Below are positions 3,090-63,389 of a DNA stretch of 64,000 nt, piece after piece; position 1 is the stretch's first letter, and every line of letters begins with the position of its first letter. Below the pieces are notes generated by a model. That model had not been told where the DNA came from. It did not search any database and saw only the letters and a list, made by a program, of their open reading frames with translations. Source of the DNA: Macrostomum lignano (lineage: Eukaryota). Position numbers and translations under genes: made by a program. Location of the stretch: contig NIVC01000026.1 in the NCBI GenBank assembly GCA_002269645.1, forward strand, positions 1 through 64,000, read 5' to 3'.

Positions 3090-5569
3090 CGGTCATCAAA
3101 GTATCAATCAAATTACTGGCCAATTAAGCATTGGTTCCATACCGTCCAGGAGCCTAAAAGCTTTACTTCGCACCTACCATGTTTTATCATCCAAGTTCGT
3201 AGAGCTTACCAATTCAGTTGTACCAAAGTTTTTGGAACAGACCATCTACCAGCTCAACATTAGCCTAAATCCAATAAAGTCCATTCTAAAGGGGAATGTT
3301 TTTCCATTGAAAGCTACTTGCACAATATCGAAACTCACTCGTAGGTCCATTCGCTCTGCAGCTTCCGCCCTCTCACGAGTCCGTGCCGAATGCAGAACGC
3401 TAGCAGCGCATACCGGAGCTTCCAGCGGTATCTCGAAACCGCGCTGCTCACCGCGAACACAACCATCAGTCCGCCGATCGCCGAGGACAACACAGCAATC
3501 AGCCGTCTGCTGTAGCAGTCCCACCAGGACAGTCGGAAGTCCAACAGCATGACATTGCTGATTGGATGGGACCCGTTAGGCATCTTGTTGCACATTGCAT
3601 TGGATAGCCACGAACCTTTGTTCTCAATCTGGTAGATCGGGTACTGCTGTCTCATCCAGTCAGTAAACTTCACCAAGTCGCATGAGCAGACGAACTGGTT
3701 ACCTCCGAAGAGCACCCTGAGATCCGGCATTCGATTGAAAGCTGCAGGCCTCAGACTCACGATTGGGTTGGCGGCAAGTTTAAGCACTTTGAGATTCGGT
3801 GTCCTCGTAATGAAAAGGTCTGACGAAAATTCGGAGAAGGAGTTCTTCGCGAGGTTCAAGGTGGTTAGATTGGGCATCCGGACACTCAGAATGTGTTTCA
3901 CTTTATCGATGTCGTTTCCTTCCAAGTCAAGAGTTCTCAGTGAGGTGAGATTCGTCAGCATTGACTTTATGATTCCATCGGTTTGTCTGCCGACTAAACA
4001 CTTTCTCAAGTTGAGGTGTTGAAGATGTCTGAGCGGTGCGAGGAACCCGTTTGCATGGCACAGCGCCTTCGACAGCATGTCGTTTTGCGAGAGGTCCAGG
4101 TTCGTCAGCTTGTCGCATCCACGGAACCAAGTCTTGTCGACAGTGCACCATGCGTTGTTATGCAGGTTGCTTAGCTTTAAGTAGGTCAGATTCTTCTGAT
4201 CCATGAAAGCATCAACAAGTGCAGCAGATATGCTTGCGTAGGACAAATCCAGAGAGCGCAAGTTGGGGAGAATGCCTCGAAGTGAGGTAGCCTTGACGTC
4301 CATGTTGTTGTTCTTCTCCATGATTAGCGTCTCTAGATTGGGCGTTTGTCGAAGAGCTTCTTTGGGAAACTCGTACAGATGGCAGTTGGTAAGGACTAAA
4401 GTTTTCAGTTTGGGTAGACCACTGAAAACATTTGGTGGCAGCAGATTTAACTTTGTGTTGGTTAATGACAGTGTTCTCAGCTGGGAGCAGTTGAGCAGCT
4501 TGTTTGGGTATGACAAGCTAATTGGTGAGTGGCTGATGGATATTTCCCTTATCCAAGGCAAGGACTCGCACAGACGATTGAAGTCGTCATACGGGAATCC
4601 CGGCTTGCTCAGGGAGAACTGGACGGAGAGTTTATTGAAGAGCGCGGGGTCCTTGACTCGGCTTGCAGCTCGCAGCAGCCTCTTCAACAGCTTCTCATTC
4701 AATCGCGAAGAAGAAATCTCGATCGTCTGCAGCTGGAAGTCGGCAAACGGTGACTCACCGACAGACACCAGATGGTAGTTAGTCATGGAAAATGAGGACA
4801 ATGTGAACCCTTCGATTTGAGCTGGGGCATCTAGCTGGAATGAACGATCATCACCGTGCAAGCCCAAATGAAGGCCAGATCGGTTAGCAGTGTTTGTCAA
4901 GCTGATGCTGGAGAAGTTTCCATGAGGGAGATTGCCGTAAATTTCGAACTGAAAGCTTGGAGCAGTTGTATTAAATTGGTATTTGATTGTCTTCAGCATC
5001 GACGGAGAGCTATTAATGGTCACCTTTTTAAGAGACCGAAAGCCAATGAATGAATTCCGACCAAGAGTTGATGCCCGTGATTTTATCGTGACACCTCTAA
5101 AGTACAATTCGGATAAGTTGACGGAGCAGCACATTGTCTCCGACAGTCTACCAAGGTCAGTGACGATGTTCATAAACTGCATCTCCAGGTACCGCAGTTT
5201 CTTCAGGTGTTTTAAAACCTTTGTTTCTTTGAAGACGTAATTAACCGGAGATCCGAAAGTGAGCTCTTTCAGGTGTTGCCAATTCGAGTGCTTGAATAGA
5301 TCCGCTTGGATTTCAATTTCCCTGCCTTTGGATTCTTTTGAGCAGGAAATTTTCAAATGGGTTACGGGACAAACGTTCGGATTGATTGAAGCAGCGATGG
5401 CGTTCATGTCAGCCTGATTGAGACAGTTCTCCATCTTCACGCACATGAGATAGGGATCTTTCCTTTCGATTGTGCAGTCGCATTTTGTTGGGAAGCGGCA
5501 AGACTGCACAGGCGAAGTTCTGCTCGAAGCGGCGCAGCAAACTGAAAGCAACACAATCAGTTGCCACAT
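2567..5569 (-). CDS. Toll-like receptor copy 2 (signal peptide, LRRNT, LRRs, LRRCT, TM, TIR); exons 5569-3339 and 3083-2567, 915 aa
   Basis: 744-aa ORF: signal peptide MWQLIVLLSVCC, LxxLxLxxN repeats, LRRCT GNQFVCSCDL, TM LIAVLSSAIGGLMVVFAV. Phase-2 intron (GTGAGT...CCGCAG) joins it in frame to a TIR domain (YDACFIY, ERDAPVG, AIDKSRQAVLVLSRGFL). Exon lengths total 2748 nt, divisible by 3. Confidence 0.9.
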
Positions 5570-6309: not shown

Positions 6310-9300
6310 ATGAATTGGTTAACTTGTCTGCTTTTTAGTTGCTTTCTGCTTCTCGTGGCTTCGGGAGCGGACGCCAACAACGCGGTACCTTGCAGCTTTC
6401 CTGAGAAATGCTCCTGCGAGTTGAGGAATGCCGGCACAAAACTCTGGTGCAAAGGCATGCAGAACTGCTTCAGTCAGGCTGGCATGGACGCACTTGGAGC
6501 TTCAATGAATCCTGTAAGTTGTCCAGTGAAAATGGTAACACTCAGCTGCAATAGGGAATCCGTTTGGCCGATAGTTGAGATCACATCGGAGCTGTTTCGG
6601 CACGAGCAATGGCGGAGACTGGAAGAGTTGTACATCGGCACGTCGTGCAAATTTGTGTTTAGAGAGAAACGGGTCTTGTCGAATTTACCAAACCTAAAGT
6701 CGTTTTCGCTGCGGAACAACGACTTATCTGCGAATCTCGGCGAGTTCTCCGAAATATTCTGCTGCCCGAAGGGACTGTCTGAGATTTTAATTGACAGCCT
6801 AGGAGCAGAACAAATGGGTACACGATTCGGACAGAGATCGTTTCTAAAGTTGAATGCGTTAAAAAAGTTCACCGTGATCCGATCGCCAAAGCTCTTCGAT
6901 CGATTAGAATTTGTGCTCAACACCAGCTCGCCGGCGTTCTCGTTCCACTGGCACGGCAAGTTGCCGCACTCCAATAAGGAATTTTCTAATCTGCTCTTTA
7001 CGAATCTGGCTAGCAGGAGCAGTCTCGAACTGCTGATTTCGGATGGCGCCACCCAGTTGGAGTTGGACTCGCCTGCTCAGCTCAGTGGCTTCGATTTCAC
7101 CAGGCTGGACATCCAGAACACTCGGCTGTCGCGCATCGGAGACGCGCCATTCCGAAACTTCACACTTAAAGACATTTCCATAACTGCCGCTGGACTAAAT
7201 GAAATCATGCTGCCCCAGCTGCTGCGCGCAATCGCCAAAGTCAAGAATCCGCTAGCGGTGAGAACTCTGGCTCTGGAGTTTAACTATAAAAAGCGCGGAT
7301 TTCCGTACGATGAGTTCAACGCACTGTGCAAGGCTCTGCCACTGTTGCGTCGATTGTCATTAAGTCACTCGTCGGTGAGCTTTGGTCAGTCTGAGCAGTA
7401 CTTCGACTGTCCTCAGCTGTTCCTGCTGTCAATTACGAACTGCAACCTGCAGGACGAGGACATTCCACCGCGAGCATTCGACAAATTGACTCGACTAGAA
7501 AACATACGGTTAATTAATAATCAATTGAGTAGGGTGCCTAAGGACCTGCTCCGTAATTTGAGTCAAATCACCTACCTTGACCTCAGTCACAATAGACAAC
7601 TGAAATTGAAAGCATCTTCGTTTCGGGGCATTTTGCCCAGCCTGCAGACCCTGCGCCTGACGCAGACAGGCTACACGGAGCCACTCACTGATGCATTTGT
7701 TGATCAGTCAAATCTTACCGAGCTGCACCTGAATAAACTGGTGGAACTGAGATCCACACGCTGTCCGTTTAGAAAGACTTGGTTTAAAAACTGTTCTAAA
7801 CTGAAAACACTTAACCTAGCTGGTGATCACTTTCTGAATTACGGAGAGTGCCATGGCGGTGACTTCTTTGATCCGTTGACTAGCTTGGAAAGTCTCTCCA
7901 TAAGCTCCTGCGACTTTGGCCATCAGTCGGATGGAACTATCAAGGCTCTGCTGTCGAAACTCTCAACACTAAAAACATTAATGGCTTCCGGCAACCAGCT
8001 GGCAAGACTTGAATTCTTTTTGAACAGAAAGTTTGAAAATTTAAACCTTCTAGACGTCTCTTGGAATTCCTTCTCAAGCATTCCCGTGGACCTGATTGCC
8101 ACAACAACCCCCGCACTGCGCAACCTGGAACTAATGGAGGTCCCTCTAGCCAACATAGATCCAAAAACATTCGACAAACTGCCGAAGCTTCGCCTCAGGC
8201 TCGGTCGCAATCAATTCAGGTGCGCGTGCAACCTGCTGCCATTCGCCGATTGGCTCAGAGAGCAGTGGCCCGTCTATCAGCTGGAAAGCAAAGGCGATTG
8301 GCTGCTCAACGCCATCTGCTACACAGCCTCGAACTCTACCAAGCGAGTGATCGACTTCCGCCTGTCCTGGTGGGACTGCTACAGCCGACGCCTGATTTTT
8401 ATTCTATCCGCATCGATTGGTGGCCTGCTGATTCTGTTTATCCTAACCGCTCTGCTGTTGCGCTACCGGTGGAAGCTGCGCTACACAATACTTGCCTTCG
8501 GCATTCGTAACGGAATTGTGAACAGGAAGCAGCAGAACGAATGGACTTATGAGTAAGTTTTGGAGCTCAATAAATATCAATAATTGAACGATGGGCTGTT
8601 GGCGCACCCTGTGCCTCACACTACCACCGCTGAAGCGATTCTACCCATTCCACTGACTCCCTGAGCACATACAATCGCACAATACTGTACGCAGGCACAG
8701 CACTCATGCACACGCTCACACAGGGTGTACAGCGGCGCTGACTTTCTAATCGGTCAGGCATGCACAGTCTCTGTGCCTTGGGGCTTGGCCCTCGTGGCTT
8801 TGTAAACTTGAAATCTCAATTTGCTACTGAACATTTCTAAGCCATTGTTCCTGAATGAAGCCAGCCCTGAGCTCTGATCCCACACCTGACTGATTCCACT
8901 CCCACCTCCGCAGCGCCTGCTTCATCTACGACGAGACGGACAGCTCGGTGTCCGAGTGGGCCGGCGACCTCGTCCTCAAGCTTGAGACGGACCTGCGGCT
9001 CCGCCTGTACGAAGCCGAGAGAGACGCGCCCGTCGGGTCCAACATGCTGGACGAGGCGGCCTCCGCCATCGACAAGAGCCGACACGCCGTGCTGGTGCTG
9101 AGCCGGGGCTTCCTGGAGAACAGGCTCAACTTGTACAGCGCACAGTGGAGCAGCGAATCGCTGTTTATGCGCCGCCGCTCTCTGGCCGTTCTCGTCATGA
9201 GGGAGAAGCTGAGCGAGTCCGAGCTGCGATTTCCGGAATGCAAGGTGCTGCATCGGCTGTACCGGATGTGCAAGCGGGACCGGATTGTAGACTGCAGCGG

Positions 9301-9460
9301 CTGCGGAGTCGGGAGCAACTCCGCGAACCGGCTGGGACTGCTGCTGTACGACGGCGCGGACGTGTCGGGACGGTCGCAGGAGCGTCGGGCTCAGGAGTCC
9401 GAGACCGAGTCTGATGGTGCCGAGGCCGCAGGGACGAAGTCGCTTCTGTCTGACGACTAG
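6310..9460 (+). CDS. Toll-like receptor copy 3; exons 6310-8552 and 8914-9460, 929 aa
   Basis: 748-aa ORF with signal peptide, LRRs, LRRCT (RNQFRCACNL) and TM. Donor GA|GTAAGT at 8552/8553, acceptor ccgcag|C at 8913/8914, in-frame TIR exon. Exon lengths total 2790 nt. Confidence 0.9.
8600..8800 (-). mobile_element. SINE family 2 fragment inside the TLR copy 3 intron (another fragment ~27135-27220)
   Basis: Reverse complement aligns with 37010-37212 (ccccaaggcacag...catgcct...cctgtgtgag...gctcaggggagtc...gaatggg...agggtgc). Confidence 0.65.
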
Positions 9461-10919: not shown

Positions 10920-13900
10920 TTAAAGTTCGTCCTTGGCCGCAGCATCGGCGGGCAATTTTTCCATGAAAGTCTTGACGCCAGCCTCCGTGATGGGCGCCTC
11001 AGCATAGTCCTGGCTCTTCTTGCCGTCACTAAACAGCATGAAGGTTGGGAAGCCTTCGACTTTCTGGTCCTCGCACAGCTCTGCGGAATAGATGAGGTTT
11101 TTAAGGTTGAAAATCCTGCTCTACTGAGTGTCTACTCATCTACTCTAATGAGTGCCTACTCATCTACTCTAATGAGTGCCTACTCATCTACTCTAATGAG
11201 TGTCTACTCATCTACTCTAATGAGTGCCTACTCATCTACTCTAATCACCCACGCAATGACCCCCCAAGCTCACTCTCGTTAGCCTTGACATCGCAGTTGA
11301 CGGCCGCCAAGACTTTGCCCTGCGCTCCAACCAGACCTTCGGCCGCTTTGTCGAACGCGGGCTTGGCCTGCTGGCAGTGCGGGCACCAAGGCGCGTAGAA
11401 CATCACCAGGACGTACTTGTTAGACTTGATTGACTCGTCGAACTGCTCAGAGCCCTCCAAGTAGGTCACATGCTTCATCTTGTCCTCGGGCTTCTCAGCT
11501 TGCGCACCAGCGGCCGATTCTTCTTTGCCGCTGTCTCCCGGCTTTTTCTCTTCTTCCACCGGAGTGGGCGGCACCTTCTCTTTAGGCGGGTTGCTGATGA
11601 AATCCAACAGCGGTTTGGCCTCAATTTCGTCCTCGAACTCCGCCCACATTTCGCGCTTCTTCATCAGTCGGATAGTGGGGTAGCCTTCCACTTTCTCGTC
11701 TTCGCAGAGCTCTGTAATATTATGTTATGGTAACAGTGGTGGCGACTTTAAAGACAGTGGTTAATAAAACATCAAAGAAGCAAATACAGTGTCGGTAAAC
11801 ATCAAAGAGCCATCAGTGTCGGCAGAGATCAAAGAAAAAAGCACAGTGTCGGTAAACATCAAAGAACCACCAGTGTCGGCAGAGATCAAAGAAGCAAGCA
11901 CAGTGTCGGCAGAGATCAAAGAAGCAAGCACTGTGTCGGCAAACATCAAAGAACCATCAGTGTCGGCAGAGATCAAAGAAGCAAGCACAGTGTCGGCAGA
12001 GATCAAAGAAGCAAGCACAGTGTCGGCAGAGATCAAAGAAACAAGCACTGTGTCGGCAAACATCAAAGAACCATCAGTGTCGGCAGAGATCAAAGAAGCA
12101 AGCACAGTGTCGGCAGAGATCAAAGAAACAACACAGTGTCGGCAGAGATCAAAGAACTTGTCCCAAATGTCAACAATCCACTCACTCTGGTTGTCCTTCT
12201 GGTCGCAGTTGATCGCCGCCAAGATATTTCCTGCCACCGGTTTGGCTTCCAAATCCTTGGCCGCCTTCTCGAACTTCGGTTTGCTGTCCTTGCAGTGCGG
12301 GCACCAGGGAGCATAGTAAAAGACCAGAACGAACTCATGGCTATTTAGGATCTCTGAGTAGTTGCCGGCGCCCAGGTAGGTCACGCCGGCCATGCTGCGA
12401 TGGTTAAAACGGATTGAAAAAATTTAAATAATCTGACTAGCTATACTAGGTCCCGATCAAGTACTGAAAGTAGTGCGCATTGTAAAAACTAGTATTTATT
12501 ATGATTATATTAATAAACGATTACAACGTACTGTCCACCTAAGGCAATGTCGTTAACACACCGAAGACAATGTCGGTAATACACCGAAGACAATGTCGGT
12601 AATACACCGAAGACAATGTCGATAATACATTAAAGACAATGTCAATAACACATCGAAGACAATGTCGGTAATACACCGAAGACACTGTCGGTAACACACC
12701 GAAGACACTGTCGGTAACCCACCGAAGACAATGTCGGTAGCACACGGAAGACAGCGTCGGTAACACACCAAAGACAATGTCGGTAGCACACGGAAGATAG
12801 CGTCGGTAACACACCAAAGACAATGTCGGTAACACACCGTAAACAGCAATTACGAGAGCAGCAACTCACAAGGTGTCGGGCTCCGAGTCCTGGTCGTCCT
12901 TCTCGCTGCCAGTCGAAGACGACGGCGGCGGCCGTTTCTCGCCTTCCTTTGGCGGATTCTTCATGAATTCGATGAGCGCCTTCTCGTTGTTGTCATCCTC
13001 AAAGTCCTGGATGAGCTTGCCTTTGCTGTAGAACTTGATAGTCGGATAGCCCTCGATTTTCTCTTTGGCGCACAGGTCTGGCGAGGTTTTGGTGGGCAGT
13101 GAGGGTGAGAGCGTAGAGTGGATAGATAGAGACAGAAGTGTAGAGTCGTGAGATTGTTAGAGTTGGTAGATAGAGACAGTAGATAGGTAGATATTAGCTT
13201 GTAGAAGCATGAGAGAGTAGATTGGGTAGATAGAGACGGCAGATAAGTAGATAGTAGAAGCGTGAGAGAGTAGATTGGGTAGATAGAGACGGCAGATAAG
13301 TAGATAGTAGAAGCGTGAGAGAGTAGATTGGGTAGATAGAGACGGCAGATAAGTAGATGGTAGAAGTGTGAGAGAGTAGATTGGGTAGATAGAGACGGCA
13401 GATAAGTAGATAGTAGAAGCGTGAGAGAGTAGATTGGGTAGATAGAGACGGCAGATAAGTAGATAGTAGAAGCGTGAGAGAGTAGATTGGGTAGATAGAG
13501 ACGGCAGATAAGTAGATAGTAGAAGCGTGAGAGAGTAGATTGGGTAGATAGAGACGGCAGATAAGTAGATAGTAGAAGCGTGAGAGAGTAGATTGGGTAG
13601 ATAGAGACGGCAGATAAGTAGATAGTAGAAGCGTGAGAGAGTAGATTGGGTAGATAGAGACGGCAGATAAGTAGATAGTAGAAGCGTGAGAGAGTAGATT
13701 GGGTAGATAGAGACGGCAGATAAGTAGATAGTAGAAGCGTGAGAGAGTAGATTGGGTAGATAGAGACGGCAGATAAGTAGATAGTAGAAGCGTGAGAGAG
13801 TAGAGTGTGTAGATAGAGACGGCAGATAAGTAGATAGTAGAAGCGTGAGAGAGTAGATTGGGTAGATAGAGACGGCAGATAAGTAGATAGTAGAAGCGTG

Positions 13901-14488
13901 AGAGAGTAGAGTGTGTAGATAGAGACGGCAGATAAGTAGATAGTAGAAGCGTGAGAGAGTAGATTGGGTAGATAGAGACGGCAGATAAGTAAATAGTAGA
14001 AGCGTGAGAGAGTAGATTGGGTAGATAGAGACGGCAGATAAGTAGATAGTAGAAGCGTGAGAGAGTAGAGTGTGTAGATAGAGACGGTAAATAGAAGAAG
14101 TGTCAGAGAATAGAGTGGGAGTGAGAGAACGCACATGTCACTGCCCGAAGTCCAATGTACGGTAACTACCGATATGTAACGAAAAGAACTTATTAGCCAA
14201 AGCATGACACGGTAAATTACCCTGATTCTTCTTTTCATCGCAGTTGACCATGCCCATAACTTTGCCAGGCTCTTTGGTCACCTCCTTGGCTGCGTTATTG
14301 AACTTCGGCTTGGCCTCGACGCAGTGCGGGCACCAGGGCGCGTAGAACATCACCAGGGAGCCATCGTTGGTGTCGATAGTCTTGTGAAAGCTGGCCGCGT
14401 CGAGTTCAAGAGCCTCGGCGCTGACGGAATGCGCCAGAATGGGCAGCAGCAGCAGGATGGCTAGCAGTGACTGATTTTCCAACAGCAT
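10920..14488 (-). CDS. ER protein disulfide isomerase family protein: signal peptide, three thioredoxin domains (WCPHC x3), C-terminal KDEL; exons 14488-14221, 13077-12870, 12394-12186, 11711-11274, 11080-10920; 427 aa
   Basis: All junctions are GT-AG with matching phases (1,2,1,1), total 1284 nt. Three FYAPWCPHC motifs, each with a downstream GY/FPT cis-Pro loop. Ends ...ADAAAKDEL*. Architecture resembles TXNDC5/ERp46; the CPHC motif resembles PDIA5. Confidence 0.9.
11118..11245. repeat. 24-bp minisatellite in PDI intron 4
   Basis: Unit ctactctaatgagtgcctactcat, about 5 copies. Confidence 0.9.
11765..12160. repeat. ~21/24-bp minisatellite in PDI intron 3
   Basis: Unit cagtgtcggcagagatcaaagaa(gcaagca). 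Confidence 0.9.
12550..12840. repeat. ~21-bp minisatellite in PDI intron 2
   Basis: Unit acaccgaagacaatgtcggta. Confidence 0.9.
13190..14090. repeat. 53-bp minisatellite in PDI intron 1
   Basis: Unit agtagattgggtagatagagacggcagataagtagatagtagaagcgtgagag, period 53. Confidence 0.95.
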
Positions 14489-18367: not shown

Positions 18368-21300
18368 CTACATGGCATGGTAGGGATATGATGGCGGATG
18401 CTGGGCAGGATGGTAGGGCTGCTGCAGATAGTCAGGATATTGCTGAGCATAGTCCGGCGGAGCACTAGCAGATGATGCTGAAGCCATCATCACTTGACGT
18501 TGCGACATCAGGTGCTGATGCTGGTAGTGCTGGTACTGCTGCTGCTGATAGTAAACTGGCGGCTGCTGCTGATGCTGAGGGTACATCTGCGGGTACTGCT
18601 GCTGCTGGTAGGGTGGCCCGCCGGCAGCTGAGGATGTGGCAGCGGCTGCGGCTGCCGAAGCCGCTGCGGCGGCGGCCGCTGCTGCCGCAGGCTGCGCTGT
18701 CGCAGCTGATGAAGCCGGCGGAGCGGCAGCAGAAGCAGCAGCAGAAGCGGTGGCATTGGTACCACTACTACTACTAGTAGGCATGTACTGGATTGTGTTC
18801 GCACTGCGTGCGGAGATCTGCACACCGGCAGTTGATGTCGGATGCTGCGGGGGTGGCGGCTGCTGATGCTGATGATGATGATAATGATGATGAGGCGGCG
18901 GCTGAGGAGGCTGAGTTGACTGCTGTTGCACCTGCATATGAGCCTGTGCGCCCATACCGTTAACTGTTTGATAATTCATTTGCTGGACATTCACTTGGGC
19001 ATTAACGAATGTGTTGTTAACCACCATTGGCGGCTGCTGCTGAGGTGGCTGTTGCTGTTGTTGTTGTTGCTGTTGCTGCTGTTGCTGCGGAGGCTGGTGC
19101 ACCACAGGCGGCTGGGCCATGCTGATAGACTGGAACGGACCGCCGCCCATTGGTACATCTTTGCTCAGCTTGGCTAGGCTGGCTAAGCTAGCCGAAGTGA
19201 TGTTGCCTAAAGTGGAAGATCGAGACGAACAGTTTGTAGTCTGGTGCTGCTGCTGCTGCTGCGGGGGCGGCGGGTTCGGGTGATCGAAGGGCGGCATGGA
19301 CTCGGCAGGCAGTTTGCAGGGCTCAGACACCACAGATGGCGGCTGCGGTGGCGGCTGCTCAACTGACTGCGGAGGCTGCTGTGGCACCTGCGGCTCCTTT
19401 TTGCGTCGCTTTGTCGTCTTGGCAGCTGGCGGCGCTGCCGGAGGCGGAGGCGGCGGCGGGACGGGAGGAGGAAGCTGGGCAGCAGGATGATGATGATGAT
19501 GATGATGATGAGGTGGTGGTGGCGGAGGGTTGTACATCATCATCGGCTCAGCATCATATTGAGCAGGTTGATGACCAGGTGGAGCCAGCATCCTCTGCTG
19601 ATGGTGCTGATACGGCTGGTGATAGCCTGGGTACATCTGCTGTGCATTGCTACCGCTGTTATTAGTCATATTATTATTATTACTATTGTTATTATAGGGC
19701 CGTTTAGCTGCCGCTGGCTGTTGCTTGTTGCTACCGGAAGAAGAGTTTGCTGTCGCGGCGGCTGCAGCGGCTGCAGCGGCTGCTGCTGCTGCTGCTGGAT
19801 TAGGATGCTGCATCTGATGAGGCTGAGGATGCTGATGATGAGGCGGTGGCGGCATCATAGCCGTGGGCGGCGGCTGCATGAACTGCGGCTGCTGATGCTG
19901 CTGATAAGTGGCAGCTAAATAAGGATTATCCATATAGTGCTGCCTGACCATGTCTTTCCACTGCTGCTGGGCCCTGGCCTGGTCTGCGCTGTGAGGCGGC
20001 GGCAGCCCAGCCGCTGCCACCGCTGCCGCTGCCGCTGCGGCCGCCGCTCCAGACTGGGCAGCAGAGGACACCGCTGAATGAAGGGGCGGCGGTGGCGGCT
20101 GTTCAACAGCAGCGGCAGCGGCTGACAGGCCAACAGACTGGCCAATCTGTTTGATTCGTTGAATTTTCTCCTCCCGCTTGCGCAACTGTTCAGGCGTAAC
20201 TACCGGCGCCTGCTGCTGCGACGTCATTCGTTCAACGCAGGCCTGATGCCATTTGTCCGGCTTTAAACTTGGCGAGCTCAGGCACTGGCGGGCGCAATCG
20301 TTGGCCATGTGACTGGTGAAGACTCGAACTGCGGGCGCGCCGCTGGGGTTGGGGTAGTACAGCTGCGGGCTCGACTGGTGATGCTGAGGATGAAGCGCCT
20401 GACAGGTGGCTGGCTGATGAGGATACGATGGCCGAGTATTCGAAGCCGGAGCGAACTGCGGAAAATCAGTGAATTAGCGAGCCATTGATTTTTCTGGAAT
20501 GCGCTTATCTTACTACTCTTTCTTTGCTTCAGTAGCTAATCAAGCGTTCTCTGCGCTCATACAAGGTGTACAATCCCCTTTCTTAGAAACAGTGATAATG
20601 ACTCACGCAATCGCTGGGGCCGAACTGCTGCGACAGATCTGGTAAGTCCGAACGCGAACCCGGATAACAGCTGACAGATTGTTGCGAATAATAATCGGGA
20701 TATTGTTGATGATGAAGAGTCTGGTGATGCTGCTGATAGGGAAGCTGCTGCTGATGATAGTGCTGATTGTACATCGGCGACATTGGGTGCTGGAAAATAA
20801 ATGATTAGGATTACTAGCGTGTAGTTCTTACTTAAAAATTTCACTAAAATGATCATCAGTCTGACTTGCGCAAATCTTACCCTAGATTTCGAATCGATTT
20901 GAAATTTTAAATCTTTTTGAAAATCTCACCCTAGATTTTGAATATTTTGAAAATATCACACCAGATTTGGAATCTTTTTGAAAATCTCACCCTAGATTTT
21001 GAATGCACGCAAAAAATCTCACCCTAGATTTTGAAGGCACGCAAAATCTCACCCTAGATTTTGAATGCACGCAAAAAATCTCACCCTAGATTTTGAAGGC
21101 ACGCAAAAATCTCACCCTAGATTTTGAATGCATGCAAAAAATCTCACCCTAGACTTTGAATGCACGCAAAAAATCTCACCCTAGATTTTGAATGCACACA
21201 AAAAATCTCACCCTAGATTTTGAATGCACCCAAAAAATCTCACCCTAGATTTTGAATGCACACAAAAAATCTCACCCTAGATATTGAATTCACGCAAAAA

Positions 21301-24300
21301 ATCTCACCCTAGATTTTGAATGCACGCAAAAAATCTCACCCTAGATTTTGAATGCACACAAAAAATCTCACCCTAGATTTTGAATGCACGCAAAAAATCT
21401 CACCCTAGATTTTGAATGCACGCAAAAAATCTCACCCTAGATTTTGAATGCACACAAAAAATATCACCCTAGATTTTGAATGCACACAAAAAATCTCACC
21501 CTAGATATTGAATTCACGCAAAAAATCTCACCCTAGATTTTGAATGAACGCAAAAAATCTCACCCTAGATATTGAATTCACGCAAAAAATCTCACCCTAG
21601 ATTTTGAATGAACGCAAAAAATCTAACCCTAGATTTTGAATGAACGCTAAAAATCTCACACTAGATTTTGAATGTACGCAAAAAATCTCACGCTAGATTT
21701 TGAATGCACCCAAGAAATCTCACCCTAGCATCGCGCATCAGTGCCTGCTGCTGTTGCACCTGAGCAGCTGCACAGCCGCCAACAGAAGCTGGCGCAGACA
21801 TTGAAGCCGTTGCAGGCGGAGCAGAAGACGCCGACAAAGAATTCTGTTGCTGCTGATAAGATCCCGCAGAAGCGGATACTGAAGTGCTCAACGATGCTCC
21901 AGAAGTTGACGGAGCAGCTGCGGCAGCAACAGAAGTATTGACAGATGAAGCTAAAGATGCTGCAGGAGTAACCGAAGTCGGCGTGTGCGGAGTTGAACCA
22001 CCGGGCTGATAGCCGACGCTTCTTGGGCCGCCGATCTGCGCGCCGCCGCTGTTGAAATTATTCTGCGCTGGCGGGCAGCTGTGCGGCTGCTGCGGCTGTT
22101 GATAATGATGATGCTGCTGCTGCAACTCGTGATGCTGCAGCTGAGGCGGATTCTGCTGCTCGTCCTCGAGGCCAGCGGCGGCGGCAGCTTCGGCGGCGGC
22201 GGCTTCAGCCTCGGCTTCCTCCTCAGGCGGCACGGGCTCGTTGCGGGCTTTGCGAAGTTCCCGACAGTGCAGCCGCTCCATGCGCTGCAGGCAGTCGGGC
22301 AGGAGCTCCTCGTTGCCGAGCATGTGGCTGCCCTGGCGCAGATCGGGGACCACGACGTCTAGGAGGAAGCCCTGTAAGCAGTGGATTTGAGGCAGTACTT
22401 TGAGGAGCATTAGATTGTTTCGGGGCCATTCTCAGGGGGAATTAGTCTTTTCTTAGGGGAATTTAAAGGCTATTCTCAGGGGAATTCAGAGCCTATTCTC
22501 AGGGGAATTAAGAAGCTATTCTCAGGGGAATTAAGAGCCTATTCTCAGGGGAATTAAGAAGCTATTCTCAGGGGAATTAAGAGCCTATTCTCAGAAGAAT
22601 TCGGGGCCTATTCTCAGTGGAATTAAGAAGCTATTCTCAGGGGAATTAAGAGCCTATTCTCAGAAGAATTCGGAGCCTATTCTCAGTGGAATTCAGAAGC
22701 TATTCTCAGGGCAATTCATAGCCTATTTTCAGGGGAATTCAGAGGCTATTTTCATGGGAATTAAGAGGCTATTCTCAGGGGAGATAAGAGGCTATTCTCA
22801 GAGGAATTCAGAGCCTCCTTCAGTCAGCATCCAACCAACCTGCAGGAAGCCGCCCAGATCGCGCTCGTTCTCATTCTTGGAGGCCAGCATATCGTTGGTG
22901 AACTTTTCCCAATCCTCAGCGCAGGGTCCGACAACCATCTCGTAGGCCTGCTGAGACGCCGGTGGGCTGGCGCCGCCGCCGCAGCCGCTGCCGACGCTTC
23001 CGACGCTGCAGGGGCCGCCACTGGAGCCGCCTCCGCCTCCGCCGATGCTGTCATCTAAGTCGAATCTCTGCCGATACAATCGGTGATCGTCCAAATAGAA
23101 GTGGCGCCGATTTCTGCGATCGGCGCCGCAATTGATGGCGCCGCAGTCGTCCTGCTGTTGAGAGTCGTAGCGCATCTCCATCTCCCAGTTAGGGATCAGG
23201 TCGTCGTTTAAATAATCAATCACCTTTTTCAATAGGCGGGTTTTCGACTCAAAGCCCAGATCGTCCAGTTTACTAGCTGATAGCTGCTTGGCAATTTGCG
23301 GTCGCTTTTCCTAGAAATGATGCGGCAGAGGAAGGCTTTGAATTCGATGTTGGAAATGTTGTGCAGGAATTAAATAATGACACTATATTCCTAGAAATGA
23401 CACTATATTCCTAGAAATGGCACTATACTCCTAGAGATTGCACTATACTCCTAGGAATGGCACTATACTCCTAGGAATGGCACTATACTCCTAGGAATGG
23501 CACTATAACCCATAATGGCACTTTAACCCCTAGAAAGGGCACTATAACCCATAGAAATGGAACTTATACTCCCAGAAATGGCAACTATACTAATGGAAAT
23601 GGCACTATACTCCTAGAAATGGCACTATACTCCTAGAAATGCCGCTATATCCCTAGGAATGGCACTATACTCCTAGAAATGGCACTATATATCTCTAGGA
23701 ATGGCACTATATCCCTAGAAATGGCACTATATCCATAGAAATGGCACTATATCCCTAGGAATGGCACTATATCCCTAGAAATGGCACTATACTCCTAGAA
23801 ATGGCACTATACTCCTAGAAATGGCACTATACTCCTAGAAATGGCACTATATCACTAGAAATCGCACTTATACTAATAGAATAACTTTACTTCTAAAAAT
23901 GGCGCTGTAAAACTAAAACATTAAAATTTTCAAGAAAAATAAGCAGGTAAATAATGATCAAATTATCCAGCTAGGTACTCACCTGAAAGTACAACGCCAG
24001 CTGCTGCTCAGCATTCTGCATTGTCACATTTGGATCTCCGCCTCGCATGACTCGCAATATCCTGGCCAGAATGTCTCTCAGCACGCCAGTATCCGGATTG
24101 TCCAGCACCCGCTCCAAATCCGTGAGCCGGATTCTTGGAAATCGAAACCGTTTCTTATGGAAGGCTAAGAAATACAATATAGTAGGCAGCTGCCAGTCTT
24201 CTAGGCGACGATTTCTCTGGCCGAAACCGTTCTCGGATAAATTGGCCGACATGTTGGACATTGGGCCATTGGACATTGGCCCGTTGGACATTGGCCCATT

Positions 24301-24330
24301 GGATAATGGCCCGCCATTGGACTGATCCAT
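18368..24330 (-). CDS. Predicted 1245-aa protein: N-terminal CECR2/dikar-like DDT + WHIM module fused to BCL9/Legless-like HD1-HD2-HD3 and Q/P/H/A-rich tail; exons 24330-23983, 23310-22840, 22371-21724, 20789-20607, 20455-18368
   Basis: All four introns are GT-AG and phase 0; total 3738 nt with no internal stop. DDT-like WQLPTILYFLAFHKKRFRFPRIRLTDLERVL; WHIM-like SKLDDLGFESKTRLLKKVIDY, GADRRNRRHFYLDDHRLYRQ, EDWEKFTNDML..NERDL. HD1-like VRVFTSHMANDCARQCL..WH, HD2-like VTPEQLRKREEKIQRIKQI, HD3-like WKDMVRQHY. The exon 2 donor (GTTGGT) is weak. Confidence 0.75.
20930..21723. repeat. 32-bp minisatellite in intron 3 of the DDT-BCL9 gene; each unit contains the 5' splice-site sequence
   Basis: Unit aaaaaatctcaccctagattttgaatgcacgc; on the minus strand it reads ctagg|gtgagatt, identical to the real junction at 21724/21723. 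Confidence 0.95.
22420..22810. repeat. 23-bp minisatellite in intron 2 of the DDT-BCL9 gene
   Basis: Unit ctattctcaggggaattaagag(c/a). Confidence 0.9.
23378..23880. repeat. 20-bp minisatellite in intron 1 of the DDT-BCL9 gene
   Basis: Unit cactatactcctagaaatgg; on the minus strand catttctag|g matches the real acceptor at 23311/23310. Confidence 0.9.
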
Positions 24331-24519
24331 CACTGTAGGATGGCTGCTGACTGCCCGTTTGCGACTCTCTGGAGTAGTAATGAATTCATTAGCCGGGTGA
24401 TTTTGTGTTTTGTTGTGTTTTTAATCCAATATCAGTCTACTACCAGTAATATTATTAGGACTTGTGCATACTGAGAATTCAAGTTCATGTTAATTATGCG
24501 ATAGTTGTAACTTAAAAGC

Positions 24520-24705
24520 GTATCTATCCATCTATCTATCTATCTGTCTATCCGTCCATCTATCTATCTATCTATCTGTCTGTCTGTCTATTTATCTATC
24601 TGTCTATCTATCTATCTATCTATCTGTCTATCTGTTTATCTATCTATATATCTATCTGTCTATCTATCTATATATCTATCTATCTATCTATCTGTCTATC
24701 CATCC

Positions 24706-24765
<60 letters not shown>

Positions 24766-24793
24766 GTCTGTCTATCCATCCATCCATCCATCC

Positions 24794-24865
<72 letters not shown>

Positions 24866-25002
24866 GTCTATCTGTTTATCTATCTATATATCTATCTGTC
24901 TATCTATCTATCTATCTGTCTATCTGTTTATCTATCTATCTATCCATCTATCTATCTATCTATCTATCTATCCATCTATCTATCTATCTGTTTATCTATC
25001 TG

Positions 25003-25061
<59 letters not shown>

Positions 25062-25245
25062 GTCTATCTGTTTATCTATCTATCTATCCATCTATCTATC
25101 TATCTATCTATCATCTGTCCATCCATCCATCTATCTATCTATCCATCTATCTATCTATCCATCTATATATCTATCTATCTATCTGTCTATCCATCCATCT
25201 ATCTATCTATCTATCTATCTGTCTATCTATATATCTATATATCGA
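24520..25245. repeat. (TATC)n / GATA microsatellite, ~720 bp
   Basis: Direct reading, with TGTC and TCCA variants. Confidence 0.95.
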
Positions 25246-26029
25246 TCTACTTTTGCCTATTTATATTAGTTATCATTCATCAGTGCACTAGAAGAATTAT
25301 ACTAGCTTGTAAGTTTAAGCTTCAATTCAGAATAACTTGCTGTTATTACAGCAAGTCTAAATGAAAGATAAATGTACACAAGGGAAAATAAATTATCGTA
25401 TTATATAAATGCACTGCTACTGGAAGCAGGAAAAAGCCACGCCACTGCCAAACACACGATTATTATTATTATAACTGTCAGACCCGCTGCCATCCTCTCG
25501 AACACACATGCACCCATCAGATGTCGGAAAACAAACCGTTGACCGAAAAAACCCTTTCCCAAGTTTCTTTCTTAGTAGACGTAGCTAAAAGCTAAAAAAA
25601 TATAGAAATCTCTGTAAAGGAAAAGCGCATTAAAATACTCAGCTAGGGAGGGCAACAGACCCCAATGCAAGAAAGTGGAGATGCATGCCACTTCTAGAAG
25701 TAAATTTCGGCATTTCAAAAATAGAATTTGCTATTGGGCTGGTGTTGGTGCAGCGGTGGAACGCATGTATATATATTGTATATATTGCTAATGCTTATGT
25801 GCGCGCATCAGCTGCAAATCTTTCACTACATACTCGTACAAACTTTGGTGCGCGTCTCTCTAGGGCCAAATAGGAAAGCCGGGGATGCAGCGGGAAAAGG
25901 GCTGGAAGCCTGAAGTGTTTTAACTTATTGGGCATTCGCACACAAGTGCTGCCTATGCACCTAGCATTGCTATCGCTAGACATTGCTGGCATTTAACATT
26001 GAATTCTCTCATTTTAACTGCGCTGGTAT

Positions 26030-26600: not shown

Positions 26601-28278
26601 ACTCAGTCGCATCTGTTTTCTATCATTTCTGCTCATCCTTCTTATTATTAACCTCATCTCATTTTACAAGCTCAAAACCTTGTTAAACAGAAAAATTTTC
26701 ACACCAAAAATGCAACGAATTTTCACATGAATAAAGCTATTGTGCTGTAGTTCTACAGCACAGAACAACTGGACAGTCAAAAACATTCCACTTTAGTTTT
26801 GTTAACCAAAATTAAGCATTAAAGCTTGCCTAACCCACTAAACTAAGCAATGAACACAGTTGGTATTTTGCGAGAGCGACAGATACAGAAGTAGGAGTGA
26901 CGTATTTGACTGAGAATGGAATTAAGACGAGAGAGAGAGAGAGAGATACTGGGACAGACGATATACATATTTCAAGTGTACAGCTTTTTTTTCTTCAAAG
27001 AATGAGCTAGTTAAGTGGTAAAGCAACGAATTTTATTAGTGGTTAGGAAAGAAAATGCTTCACTGTGTATTTTCTGATTGGCATAGTGTCAGGAGAGATG
27101 GCAAGAAAAATTCAACTTGTATAACACTCATAACACACACGCTCCCACCGTGTACGGAGGCTTTGTTGACTTTCTAATTTTCAGGCATGTGCACTCCCTG
27201 TGCCTTGGGGGTTGGTCATCCCCCATATATAAACACCATTAGCCACTAGCCTATGTCTCTAATCTCTATCCCTCTCCGCATTATTAATACAACCGGAGTG
27301 AAGCCCTCCTTCATCTCTCTCCCACAGACCAGGCCGAGTCTTGTGTGTTCCCCTTCTCTCCCCCAGCTTCTCTATGTCGAATCCCAACATCATCCTAACC
27401 CTTTACAGTCCACACGCACACAACTGCACACACAGCCAGACCTGTGCCCTCCCCGCTCTTCTCTCCTCTCTCGCTCTCTAGCAAGATACGCTTAACTCTT
27501 CTTTCTGTCTAACCATAGCTAGTTCCCAGAAATCTCCCCGAGCTCTCCAAGCCGTTCAAAGCCTTTTTTCTTGCCCTTACTTACCGCCGACTCAGCCAGA
27601 GGCCAATCAAGCTTGCTACCGTCTCTCTTCTCTCGCTCCTCTCCATTCATTTTTTGCGTATCCAATCCACTGCTCACTCGCTATTGCCCTAGAACCTCGT
27701 CCACCTTACTTTTCCCAGCAATATACCAAACAATAAACCAAAAAATTAATATACCGCCTAATAATGTACCTATTAGTCAAAACTTTACAAAATCGAATAG
27801 TTTCTGACCGTCTCTGTATCGCTCCCTCAATTGCAGTTAAACAAAACTCCCAAATGTCACTGGGGCCCGGGGCACAGTGCTTCCCAAACTCCCAATCTCA
27901 ATGCTAACCCTGGATACAGGCATCCAGGCATAAATAACGGGGGACGAAAAAACCGCTTGGCTCACAACGCAAGGGAAGGAAGGATCCGCAGACATGACGC
28001 TTGTGGAGTAAATGGAGGGTAGAGATTCTGTGAAGCCTGAAAGAAGAACAGAGAATATAAGTTAAGCCAGGGACTTCTCTATATAGCATCTGGACTGGAA
28101 GCTCCCCACCCGCATTTACCTTAGAGGGGCAAAAGCCCTTCCCAAAATAGCTTAGATCCTAGTTACATCGTATATTAGATAGCTGGCCATTATGCACTTA
28201 TTGTTATATAAATCATGAGCCTAATAAAAATTCATTCAGAATGATTTAGATTTCTTTTTTTAAAAATTTCGATTATTA

Positions 28279-29355
28279 AAAATTTCGATTTTCGATTTCG
28301 ATAAATTTCGATAACTTCGATGCTCTCAACTGAAGGTAGCTTTCGATGTCTAGACCATTCTTTGAACCAACTTTGGCTGAAGCAGACCGAAGGGTTCGAT
28401 CAGATGGAAAACAGAGGACGTCCTGCTCCAGTATTGTCTTATAAGCCGAAGCGCTGGTGGAGTACAGAACATAAGCGAAGATCATGAGCTGCTGTGAATA
28501 TCTCCTTCTGCAGCTCGGCTGCCTGCTGAGTTTCAGCTGCTCCAAAATGAAGCCAACAGTGCGATTCTCAACAAGATTCTCCGCTTCTTCCAGAAGATCT
28601 TGGGCCATGTCAAGCATACGGTTGGCCTTGCCTTCAGCTTTGGCACTGTCAGTGTCTACCTCCAAGTTCTTGACTCTGGACATTATGTTGACTAGTTGAC
28701 TGAGAGTCGATACTTTCCCGTCCGAAAGTAAGTCTCTGAGTCGGGTTGGCTTTAGCAACACTCCATTGACTCCAATAGTGATGCTGTGGTCCTTAGCCAT
28801 GTAGATGTAGCATGAGACATGAAAGGAAGGCTCCATGTTCAGCGCGTAGATGCAGCTGGTCAGCAAGCATGATGGTAAGAAATCCTACCGGTTTTTCTTC
28901 CTCTCGATTCAGTTTTAGCTGCACTTCATCAAGGTAGTCGTCAACGATTGAGTCCGCATCTCGGAACTCATCAATTTGGCCTTGCAGTGCAGTATTTTCT
29001 CTCTCCAAGCGCTGAGTTGATGTTGCCGCAGTTGACCTCGGTTCCGCCTTGGCAGAAGAGAGATAAGTCTATTCGGGAAGATAGACGGCACCGCCCCTGG
29101 CTTCAGACACCGCCTCGACAGTTGGTCCCGGCCCTTCTTGCGGTTCGCGTTGGTGTCCAGAGAGTTTTCCACGAAGTCTTGGGGTGGAAGTGCGCAGAGC
29201 AAATGGTTGAGCTCTTGGTAGGCTCGAAGTTCTGCCTTGGATTTGCTCGCTTCCATTGTTCAAGAAGGACTGCATTGTGCATAGGATAGCCATGAGAGCT
29301 CCTTGTCCGAGGAGGCTCAATTAGTGCAACCCTGTGCTGAGCACGACTTAACCAT
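28279..29355 (-). pseudogene. Decayed THAP-domain / P-element-type transposase 5' remnant
   Basis: ATG at 29355 gives MVKSCSAQGCTN then a TGA stop. THAP C-terminal motif LKPGAVPSIFP. P-element N-terminal-like RRYSQQLMIFAYVLYSTSASAYKTILEQDVLCFPSDRTLR. Frameshifted and truncated before any catalytic domain. Confidence 0.75.
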
Positions 29356-47918: not shown

Positions 47919-48116
47919 TAATTGTAACTGCTTTTTCAATAATTCCAATAACATTGCCTGTTGAAGTGTTAAACTAATCAAATCAACTTAAATCCATTAA
48001 TAGCAATTTATCTATGATCTTCACTTTTGTAATGCTATACTTACAGCATAAAAACAAAAAAGCCATGCACTCGATTAAAAAGGATTAACATTTCTTTGCA
48101 TGAGCAAATAAGCAAA

Positions 48117-63308: not shown

Positions 63309-63389
63309 CTGCGAGATTGAAGATTTTGTCAGAATTAAATACTCTATTATCACTTTTCTACTTAGCATTAGTACCCATTCGTGTCCCAA

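What the first reader, a model, noticed from the sequence alone, without database searches (positions are those of the whole stretch)
18368..24330. Apparent fusion of an ISWI-recruiting DDT/WHIM module with a BCL9/Legless Wnt co-activator
Seen: five exons splice in frame (all phase 0, GT-AG) into 1245 aa, and exon 3 has no terminal exon of its own; unspliced, it runs into a minisatellite. Knowledge: the N-terminal ~300 aa align by eye, motif by motif, with the CECR2/dikar DDT and WHIM1-3 region that binds ISWI ATPases, but CECR2's bromodomain is absent. In its place, exon 5 has VRVFTSHMANDCARQCLSSPSLKPDKWH, an ungapped 28-residue match to BCL9 HD1 (VYVFSTEMANKAAEAVL...FH; Pygopus-binding), and VTPEQLRKREEKIQRIKQI, matching HD2 (beta-catenin-binding). 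It also has an HD3-like WKDMVRQHY and the motifs TSASLASLAK and NTIQYMP, which I recall from invertebrate BCL9s. Inference: one polypeptide could hard-wire the beta-catenin/Pygo enhanceosome to an ISWI remodeller. I know of no described protein with this architecture.
Basis: partly seen in the sequence, partly recalled or inferred. Interest (0 to 1): 0.88.

Follow-up and report, generated by a model that had tools for sequence, protein, structure and literature searches.

The report
Flatworm BCL9 with CECR2-like DDT/WHIM head
This Macrostomum lignano gene is the flatworm version of the Wnt co-activator BCL9/Legless, and it carries at its front end a CECR2-type domain that in other proteins docks ISWI chromatin remodellers, a combination shared with other flatworms and a ribbon worm and apparently never described.

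Summary
Five GT-AG, phase-0 exons on the minus strand (24330-18368) splice into 1245 aa, and every quoted motif is present. The window is Macrostomum lignano.

Both domain assignments survive testing, though neither the window protein nor its flatworm relatives reach a curated Pfam cut-off:
- **N-terminal module.** A profile of about 270 aa matches the human CECR2 N-terminus (hhalign probability 97%, E 4e-11; shuffled controls score far lower) and RSF1. The only Pfam hits are sub-threshold: KIAA2026_hel in the window, plus WHIM1 and WSD in the Tubulanus orthologue.
- **HD1 and HD2.** Flatworm-only profiles rank solved BCL9/BCL9L/Legless chains first among 177,635 PDB sequences.

The combination is not a Macrostomum oddity. 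A search of 1.8 billion proteins found the module at the N-terminus of long proteins from cestodes, trematodes and the nemertean Tubulanus. Where the proteins are long enough to show them, the same BCL9 motifs follow in the same order, and the Tubulanus protein passes Pfam BCL9.

This is therefore a conserved spiralian BCL9 architecture, annotated only as "uncharacterized", with no paper found. ISWI binding is inferred. The exon 3-4 splice has no RNA evidence here, so a two-gene operon remains a minor rival.

The parts
18368..24330 (-). Whole coding region of the M. lignano BCL9/Legless orthologue: 5 exons, 1245 aa, ATG at 24330, TAG at 18370-18368.
   Evidence: Searches give the splice model. 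One search gives 100%-identical UniRef fragments from M. lignano.
23983..24330 (-). Exon 1 (aa 1-116). It holds an N-terminal SNGPM repeat and then the DDT-like helices (aa 43-98, 24204-24037).
   Evidence: Pfam KIAA2026_hel matches aa 48-92 to profile positions 2-47 (E 0.002-0.07). hhalign to CECR2 residues 18-90.
22840..23310 (-). Exon 2 (aa 117-273). It holds the WHIM1-like helix (23268-23200), the GxD/WSD-like strand motif AINCGADRRNRRHFYLDDHRLYRQ (23139-23068; G178-A-D180 at 23127-23119), a Gly/Ser loop, and the second half of the WSD-like part (22944-22840).
   Evidence: Searches show G, D and the Y..DD.RLY residues invariant in 8 sequences. One search aligns them to CECR2 [21 protein letters not shown]. 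One search gives WHIM1 and WSD hits in the Tubulanus orthologue.
21724..22371 (-). Exon 3 (aa 274-489). Its first ~45 aa (22371-22243) are the last conserved helices of the N-module. The rest is a low-complexity Q/A/S linker.
   Evidence: One search aligns this stretch with all orthologues. One search aligns it to CECR2 LYKLLSEDFLPEI. The UniProt model P0001 skips this exon.
20607..20789 (-). Exon 4 (aa 490-550), a Q/H/Y-rich linker. Its acceptor at 20789 is the site where the operon rival would add the spliced leader.
   Evidence: P0001 joins exon 2 directly to this exon.
18368..20455 (-). Exon 5 (aa 551-1245), carrying all the BCL9 homology motifs.
20246..20329 (-). HD1-like motif (aa 593-620), the predicted binding site for the Pygopus PHD finger.
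   Evidence: with the flatworm-only profile, the top 6 of 177,635 PDB sequences are all BCL9, BCL9L or Legless HD1 chains (E 0.011-0.27).
20144..20200 (-). HD2-like helix (aa 636-654), the predicted beta-catenin-binding site.
   Evidence: Pfam BCL9 PF11502 scores 14 bits, E 0.048, below the cut-off of 25; with the flatworm-only profile, the top 3 PDB hits are BCL9 HD2 chains 8y0p_L, 2gl7_C and 3sl9_C.
19934..19969 (-). HD3-like motif QQQWKDMVRQHY (aa 713-724).
   Evidence: By eye it is colinear with QREWDRLCLDYQREK in trematodes and QREWYRLQCEYYDEK in Tubulanus. It was not tested statistically.
18779..19201 (-). C-terminal homology motifs: ITSASLASLAKLS (19201-19163), VNNTFVNAQVNVQQMNYQTVN (19021-18959) and VQISARSANTIQYMP (18823-18779).
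   Evidence: colinear blastp HSPs to the trematode and Tubulanus proteins. VNNTF scores E 4e-4 to 6e-6 and NTIQY scores E 0.28-7.
20981..21728 (.). 32-bp minisatellite (23.5 copies) filling intron 3. Each unit contains AGGGTGAGA, and the exon-3 donor is the first copy. Similar arrays fill intron 1 (23376-23874, 20 bp) and intron 2 (22424-22816, 23/69 bp).

Best explanation
The locus encodes the Macrostomum lignano orthologue of BCL9/Legless, the adaptor of the Wnt enhanceosome.

**Shown:**
- One in-frame five-exon reading frame.
- An N-terminal ~270-aa helical and beta-hairpin module homologous to the DDT-WHIM1-WSD region of CECR2 and RSF1, with the GxD signature intact.
- After a low-complexity linker, the HD1, HD2, HD3 and C-terminal BCL9 motifs follow in canonical order.
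- The same architecture occurs in cestodes, trematodes and a nemertean.

**Inferred:**
- HD2 binds beta-catenin. The equivalent of R359 and the hydrophobic face (I, I, I, V in place of L363, L366, I369, L373) are kept.
- HD1 binds the Pygopus PHD finger.
- The N-module docks the HAND-SANT-SLIDE region of an ISWI ATPase, as DDT/WHIM modules do in CECR2-SNF2L/H (CERF), RSF1-SNF2H and ACF1-ISWI.

If so, beta-catenin/TCF-bound enhancers would recruit a nucleosome-spacing remodeller through a single polypeptide.
For: **Gene model and organism.** Splice model. Organism.

**The N-module is a real, conserved domain.**
- HMMER over 1.84 billion proteins finds it in only 10 proteins. Six are outside Macrostomum, and in all six the module sits at or near the N-terminus.
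- AF2 models reach pLDDT 71-78.

**DDT/WHIM homology.**
- hhalign to CECR2: probability 97.2%, E 3.6e-11, 214 columns. To RSF1: probability 90.5%.
- Controls: reversed sequence 14.1; shuffled mean 14.0, maximum 21.9; real score 79.4.
- The Macrostomum-only profile still gives E 1.2e-5.
- Colinear sub-threshold Pfam hits: KIAA2026_hel, WHIM1 and WSD. CECR2 itself gives the same set of hits.
- The GxD signature is invariant.

**BCL9 identity.**
- HD1 and HD2 profiles rank BCL9 chains first in the PDB.
- Tubulanus XP_074659835.1 has the module and passes Pfam BCL9 at 47.7 bits. It is one 10-exon gene.
- Colinear HSPs along the whole protein.

**Single gene in Macrostomum.** Paralogue model P0003 and model P0001 both join the two halves.
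Against: - For the window protein no Pfam family reaches its curated cut-off.
- Foldseek against the PDB found nothing significant for either model, including Ioc3.
They were validated only by their own Pfam hits.
- No RNA evidence for the exon 3-4 junction could be obtained.
- The only existing model of this copy skips exon 3.
- ISWI, beta-catenin and Pygo binding are all inferred from homology.
Confidence: 0.65

Rival explanations
1. Two-gene operon, or gene fission in Macrostomum. Exons 1-3 would encode a stand-alone DDT/WHIM protein ending shortly after 21724. Exons 4-5 would be a separate BCL9 gene whose mRNA starts by spliced-leader trans-splicing at 20789, taking its start codon from the ATG that ends the leader.
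For: - About 30% of M. lignano genes are trans-spliced and 15% lie in operons. Operon spacers are often inflated by repeats and shrink to about 100 bp once the repeats are removed (PMC8629364). Intron 3 is 934 bp, of which about 750 bp is minisatellite.
- The leader ends in ATG. Exon 4 starts in phase 0, so the leader ATG followed by CAC CCA ATG would be in frame.
- Unspliced exon 3 reaches a stop after 11 codons.
- No RNA data were available here.
Against: - All detected orthologues long enough to show it, and a 64%-identical paralogue model, keep both halves in one protein.
- UniProt model P0001 splices across this region.
- There is no AATAAA or ATTAAA in intron 3.
- The frame is preserved across every junction.
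Confidence: 0.1
2. The architecture is real, but the N-module does not recruit ISWI. It would be a CECR2/KIAA2026-type helical domain used for something else, such as DNA or nucleosome contact, self-association, or another partner.
For: - The best curated match is KIAA2026_hel, a domain of unknown function, rather than DDT.
- There is no significant structural match to the one solved WHIM-ISWI complex.
- Identity to CECR2 is only about 21%.
Against: - CECR2 itself scores above the KIAA2026_hel cut-off, so that family includes a known ISWI partner. That CECR2 partners ISWI is established knowledge.
- The GxD signature, which in Ioc3 contacts the SLIDE domain (my recollection of Yamada 2011 and Aravind and Iyer 2012), is invariant in the family.
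Confidence: 0.22
3. The BCL9 motifs are chance resemblances in a low-complexity Q/A/P-rich tail, and the gene is simply a divergent CECR2-like protein.
For: - Taken one at a time, the motif matches are weak: Pfam BCL9 E 0.048 and PDB hits E 0.01-0.3.
- Single-sequence phmmer against the PDB found no BCL9 chain.
Against: - Two independent profiles each rank only BCL9 chains at the top of 177,635 sequences.
- Five motifs are colinear with a protein that passes Pfam BCL9 at E 1.4e-12.
Confidence: 0.03

Closest known systems
BCL9 / BCL9L (vertebrates) and Legless (Drosophila)
   Same: HD1, HD2, HD3 and the C-terminal motifs (TSASLASLA-like, NTIQYMP) occur in the same order within a long disordered protein. 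The presumed adaptor role between beta-catenin and Pygopus is the same.
   Different: As far as I recall their sequences, the vertebrate and fly proteins have no folded N-terminal domain. This protein and its spiralian orthologues start with a ~270-aa DDT/WHIM-type module. HD2 falls below the Pfam cut-off in all flatworms tested.
CECR2 (CERF complex) and KIAA2026/BRD10; Pfam PF23450 KIAA2026_hel
   Same: The N-terminal module is colinear with the CECR2 N-terminus, covering the DDT helices, the WHIM1 helix, the GxD...YWY...LY strand motif and the C-terminal WSD helices. It gives the same pattern of Pfam hits as CECR2, only weaker.
   Different: There is no bromodomain and no AT-hook region. About 900 aa of BCL9 sequence follow instead. 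It is not a CECR2 orthologue.
RSF1 (RSF complex), ACF1/BAZ1A, and Ioc3 (other DDT/WHIM partners of ISWI)
   Same: They share the WHIM1 and GxD/WSD motifs (probability 90.5% to RSF1).
   Different: They have different accessory domains (PHD, bromodomain, WAC). No significant structural hit to Ioc3 chains was found.
Uncharacterized orthologues: Tubulanus polymorphus XP_074659835.1, Hymenolepis diminuta VUZ46300.1, Schistosoma haematobium XP_051065945.1 and CAH8604737.1, Clonorchis sinensis GAA50121.1, Paragonimus westermani KAA3681858.1
   Same: All carry the N-module at or near the N-terminus, and the same order of BCL9 motifs follows.
   Different: - They are longer (1058-2272 aa).
- The trematode proteins have no detectable HD1.
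- Intron positions are not shared with Tubulanus.

Membership tests
BCL9/Legless | HD2 beta-catenin-binding helix at Pfam's curated threshold (PF11502, cut-off 25 bits) | tested here: not met
   On the whole protein there is no hit. On the isolated fragment it scores 14 bits, E 0.048. The paralogue fragment gives no hit.
BCL9/Legless | HD2 recognisable by profile against solved BCL9 HD2 peptides | tested here: met
   With the flatworm-only profile A4, the top 3 of 177,635 PDB sequences are BCL9 HD2 chains 8y0p_L, 2gl7_C and 3sl9_C (E 0.03-0.07).
BCL9/Legless | HD1 motif that binds the Pygopus PHD finger | tested here: met
   With the flatworm-only profile A5, the top 6 PDB hits are all BCL9, BCL9L or Legless HD1 chains (2vpb_B, 2vp7_B, 2vpe_B, 4up0_A, 2xb1_A, 3zpv_0; E 0.011-0.27). 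Only the first 16 residues align.
BCL9/Legless | Colinear orthology to a protein that passes the curated BCL9 model | tested here: met
   Tubulanus XP_074659835.1 scores 47.7 bits on PF11502. Colinear HSPs to the window protein cover the N-module (E 2e-20), HD2 (0.11), VNNTF (4e-4) and NTIQY (0.28).
BCL9/Legless | Physical binding of beta-catenin and Pygopus | not testable with these tools
   This needs pull-down, ITC or multimer modelling.
DDT/WHIM ISWI-partner module (CECR2 type) | Curated Pfam models DDT PF02791, WHIM1 PF15612, WSD PF15613 and KIAA2026_hel PF23450 | tested here: inconclusive
   - Window protein: only KIAA2026_hel, at 13.9-18.8 bits against a cut-off of 27.8.
- Tubulanus orthologue: KIAA2026_hel 21.3, WHIM1 17.7 (cut-off 19.1) and WSD 13.3, colinear with one another.
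DDT/WHIM ISWI-partner module (CECR2 type) | Profile-level homology to the CECR2 and RSF1 N-terminal regions across the whole module | tested here: met
   - hhalign to CECR2: probability 97.2%, E 3.6e-11, 214 columns. To RSF1: probability 90.5%.
- Shuffled and reversed controls score 22 or less against a real score of 79.4.
- Caveat: the reference sequences were recalled from memory and checked only through Pfam.
DDT/WHIM ISWI-partner module (CECR2 type) | Conserved GxD signature of WHIM2/WSD | tested here: met
   G178-A-D180 is invariant in all 8 family members. It aligns to GED in CECR2 and GRD in RSF1.
DDT/WHIM ISWI-partner module (CECR2 type) | Fold similarity to a solved WHIM structure (Ioc3, 2Y9Y/2Y9Z) | tested here: inconclusive
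   Foldseek against the PDB gave no hit with E <= 0.001 for either AF2 model. No AFDB library was available.
DDT/WHIM ISWI-partner module (CECR2 type) | Binding to an ISWI ATPase | not testable with these tools
   This rests on inference from homology only.
CECR2 orthologue | C-terminal bromodomain | tested here: not met
   Pfam finds no bromodomain in the 1245-aa protein.

The most novel reading that the evidence does not exclude
A DDT/WHIM head may be the ancestral state of BCL9, at least in Spiralia and possibly in Bilateria, with flies and vertebrates having lost it. In that case the Wnt enhanceosome was originally coupled directly to an ISWI remodeller. In trematodes, which keep the head but have no detectable HD1, this link may substitute for Pygopus as the chromatin anchor.
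Probability: 0.25. Interest if true: 0.85.

Novelty: new variant of a known kind. Interest (0 to 1): 0.62.

Why it matters
BCL9/Legless is treated as a largely unstructured adaptor whose job is to bridge beta-catenin to Pygopus. How Wnt enhancers engage nucleosome remodellers is still debated. ISWI/ACF1 has been reported to repress Wingless targets (Liu et al. 2008, cited in PMC5510812).

A BCL9 carrying a built-in ISWI-docking module, conserved across flatworms and a nemertean, gives a direct and testable physical link. It occurs in animals where beta-catenin sets the body axis during regeneration, and it includes parasites of medical importance. It also shows that these proteins, now labelled "uncharacterized" or given spurious names such as "Histone acetyltransferase", are BCL9 orthologues.

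Tried and rejected
- **Pfam on the whole protein halves.** No DDT, WHIM or BCL9 hit. Only short fragments gave sub-threshold hits.
- **Single-sequence phmmer against the PDB.** Only spurious low-complexity or coiled-coil hits for both halves. A profile of the N-module against PDB sequences also found nothing.
- **Foldseek of two AF2 models against the PDB.** Nothing significant. The ferritin and DH-PH hits are generic helical matches.
- **Word-indexed homologue searches.** Low-complexity words swamped them and they returned only Macrostomum models. The taxonomic spread beyond flatworms and Tubulanus therefore could not be mapped.
- **Exact look-ups for transcript contigs.** No RNA evidence resulted.
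- **Intron positions compared with Tubulanus.** None are shared, so the comparison is uninformative.
- **Literature.** No paper combines BCL9 with "DDT domain". BCL9+CECR2, BCL9+planarian and BCL9+ISWI return only gene lists and reviews.
- **Rejected: Macrostomum-specific fusion or assembly artefact.** The orthologues share the architecture.
Full report
**1. The observation**

On the minus strand, five segments are each a multiple of three in length and flanked by AG...GT: 24330-23983, 23310-22840, 22371-21724, 20789-20607 and 20455-18368. Joined, they translate without a stop into 1245 aa ending at TAG 18370-18368.

Introns 1-3 are almost entirely minisatellites. The 32-bp unit in intron 3 contains AGGGTGAGA, so the exon-3 donor is simply the first copy of that unit.

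Two details needed correction:
- Without splicing, exon 3 would terminate after 11 more codons (VRFLGCIQNLA*).
- Only the first 16 residues of the "28-residue" HD1 match align under HMMER.

**2. Organism and existing models**

The N-terminal 325 aa match UniRef entries of Macrostomum lignano at 100% identity. The names attached to these entries ("Histone acetyltransferase", "SAP domain-containing protein", "Trithorax group protein osa") are evidently spurious, because Pfam finds none of those domains.

- Model P0001 (A0A1I8J858, 481 aa) joins exon 2 directly to exons 4 and 5, skipping exon 3.
- P0003 (A0A1I8GXQ9, 560 aa) is a 64%-identical paralogue. It carries the N-module, an exon-3-like stretch, an HD1-like motif (PPVRVFASQMANECSRQC...PDQWH) and an HD2-like motif (ITAEQQRKREEKIQRIMQIG) in one model.

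**3. The N-terminal module is a real, conserved domain, and it always sits on a BCL9-like protein**

A profile of the Macrostomum module was scored by HMMER against 1.84 billion representative proteins and found only 10 proteins at E <= 0.001. Six are not from Macrostomum:
- Hymenolepis diminuta (a cestode)
- Paragonimus, Schistosoma, Echinostoma and Clonorchis (trematodes)
- Tubulanus polymorphus (a nemertean)

In each, the module lies at or near the N-terminus. Every protein long enough to show them has the following motifs in the same order:
- an HD2-like LTQEQWENRKSKIAQLEKI
- an HD3-like QREWDRLC.DYQREK
- TSASLASLARLSQ
- VNNTFFNAQLNVQQMNYQ
- TPHTIQYLP

The Tubulanus protein XP_074659835.1 passes Pfam's BCL9 model (47.7 bits against a cut-off of 25, E 1.4e-12). 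It is a single 10-exon gene.

The family alignment also covers the first ~45 residues of exon 3. The five-exon model therefore fits the orthologues better than the exon-3-skipping UniProt model does.

**4. Is the module DDT/WHIM?**

Pfam gives no hit above any curated cut-off:
- The window protein hits only KIAA2026_hel (13.9-18.8 bits against a cut-off of 27.8).
- The Tubulanus orthologue gives colinear sub-threshold hits to KIAA2026_hel (E 3.6e-4), WHIM1 (17.7 bits against a cut-off of 19.1) and WSD (E 0.1).

These are recalled sequences, not database records. I checked them with Pfam:
- CECR2 scores above the cut-off on KIAA2026_hel (40.7 bits) and just below it on WSD, DDT and WHIM1.
- RSF1 scores 53 bits on WHIM1.

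So KIAA2026_hel is the CECR2-type DDT-WHIM1 region, and CECR2 shows the same hit pattern as the spiralian module, only stronger.

| hhalign comparison | Result |
|---|---|
| 8-sequence family profile vs CECR2 | probability 97.2%, E 3.6e-11, score 79.4, 214 columns spanning the whole module |
| Family profile vs RSF1 | probability 90.5%, E 1.3e-6 |
| Control: CECR2 reversed | score 14.1 |
| Control: 100 shuffles of CECR2 | mean 14.0, sd 2.6, maximum 21.9 |
| Macrostomum-only profile vs CECR2 | E 1.2e-5 |
| Pairwise blastp vs CECR2 | 45.8 bits |

The GxD signature of the WSD/WHIM2 motif (G178-A-D180) and the following Y..DD.RLY residues are invariant in the family.

AF2 models are moderately confident (pLDDT 71 and 78). 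They show a helical bundle, a four-stranded sheet around the GxD motif, and C-terminal helices. Foldseek against the PDB found nothing significant, so the structural test is inconclusive.

No bromodomain is present, so this is not a CECR2 orthologue.

**5. Are HD1 and HD2 real?**

Single-sequence searches fail. Pfam BCL9 reaches only 14 bits on the HD2 fragment.

Profiles built from flatworm sequences alone, with the nemertean deliberately left out, were searched against 177,635 distinct PDB sequences:
- The HD2 profile ranks BCL9 HD2 chains 1st to 3rd (8y0p_L, 2gl7_C, 3sl9_C).
- The HD1 profile ranks BCL9, BCL9L and Legless HD1 chains 1st to 6th.

Each E-value is marginal (0.01-0.3). Two independent searches each topping out on the same tiny family, together with colinearity with a bona fide BCL9, leave little room for chance.

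From my knowledge of the BCL9-beta-catenin structure (Sampietro 2006), the positions equivalent to R359, L363, L366, I369 and L373 are R, I, I, I and V here.

**6. One gene or two?**

M. lignano trans-splices about 30% of its genes. About 15% sit in operons whose spacers are often inflated by repeats. The leader ends in ATG (PMC8629364).

*For the operon reading.* Intron 3 is 934 bp, of which about 750 bp is minisatellite. Exon 4 starts in phase 0. A two-gene operon, or an N-truncated trans-spliced isoform, is therefore mechanically possible.

*Against it.* The architecture is conserved in all orthologues and in the paralogue, a UniProt model splices across the region, the frame is preserved throughout, and there is no AATAAA or ATTAAA in intron 3.

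No transcript data could be reached. I put the operon reading at about 0.1.

**7. Mechanism**

*Shown:* the architecture and its conservation.

*Inferred:* HD2 binds beta-catenin, HD1 binds the Pygo PHD finger, and the DDT/WHIM head binds the HAND-SANT-SLIDE of ISWI as in CERF, RSF and ACF. Together these would tether a spacing remodeller to TCF/beta-catenin enhancers.

A rival at about 0.2 is that the head has a partner other than ISWI.

**8. Novelty**

No paper in the searchable library links BCL9 to a DDT/WHIM domain, to CECR2 or physically to ISWI. The orthologues are annotated as uncharacterized.

This is a new variant of a known family rather than a new kind of system.

Noticed in passing
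P0008, P0009, P0012, P0022 and other trematode orthologues (not in the window): The trematode BCL9-like proteins keep the N-module, HD2, HD3 and the C-terminal motifs. They have no detectable HD1: an HD1 HMM scores below 0, against 65-70 bits in the cestode and nemertean proteins. This may be loss of the Pygopus link, or an exon missed by the gene models.
   Followed up: partly
window 20981-21728, 22424-22816, 23376-23874: Each of the first three introns is filled by a different minisatellite (32, 23/69 and 20 bp units). The intron-3 unit carries a consensus 5' splice site in every copy, so there are about 23 potential cryptic donors.
   Followed up: partly
window 24253-24313 (coding) and 24521-25249: The N-terminus encodes a 15-bp repeat giving SNGPM x4, a feature also seen in the paralogue models. 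A 730-bp (GATA)n microsatellite lies about 190 bp upstream of the ATG.
   Followed up: no
window 24331-24340: An AG (CCTACAG|TG) lies 2 nt upstream of the start ATG. It could be a spliced-leader acceptor for exon 1. Because all exons are phase 0, the ATG that ends the leader would be in frame at the exon 2-5 acceptors.
   Followed up: no
window 3335-5569 (-), 6310-8556 (+), with 2567-3049 (-), 8948-9460 (+) and 498-1013 (+): A divergently oriented pair of Toll-like-receptor-type genes: about 745-aa LRR ectodomain ORFs with a transmembrane segment, followed by separate near-identical exons that score weakly as TIR. A third copy of the TIR-like exon lies at 498-1013.
   Followed up: partly
window 48096-49157 (+) and 51204-52217 (+): Tandem duplicate intronless ORFs encoding hnRNP-A-like proteins with two RRM domains and a GGY-rich tail.
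   Followed up: partly
window 46650-47875 (-); 28276-28866 (-): A mariner/Mos1-type transposase split over two overlapping frames (HTH_48 and Transposase_1), so it is frameshifted. There is also a weak match to a P-element transposase HTH.
   Followed up: no
window 11761-12393 (-) and 12961-14238, 58183-59359, 60026-61244, 63317-63886: A thioredoxin-fold exon runs into a coding-looking tandem repeat. Several other long ORFs are merely translated minisatellites. The window is very repeat-rich.
   Followed up: no
UniRef entries A0A1I8J858, A0A1I8IDM1, A0A1I8GXQ9, A0A1I8G9D1, A0A1I8FHN2, A0A1I8FA83: The M. lignano UniRef models of this gene and its paralogue carry six different, mutually inconsistent names (histone acetyltransferase, SAP, osa, DEK_C, bHLH, Clr5). 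Pfam supports none of them. Two of the models look frameshifted.
   Followed up: partly
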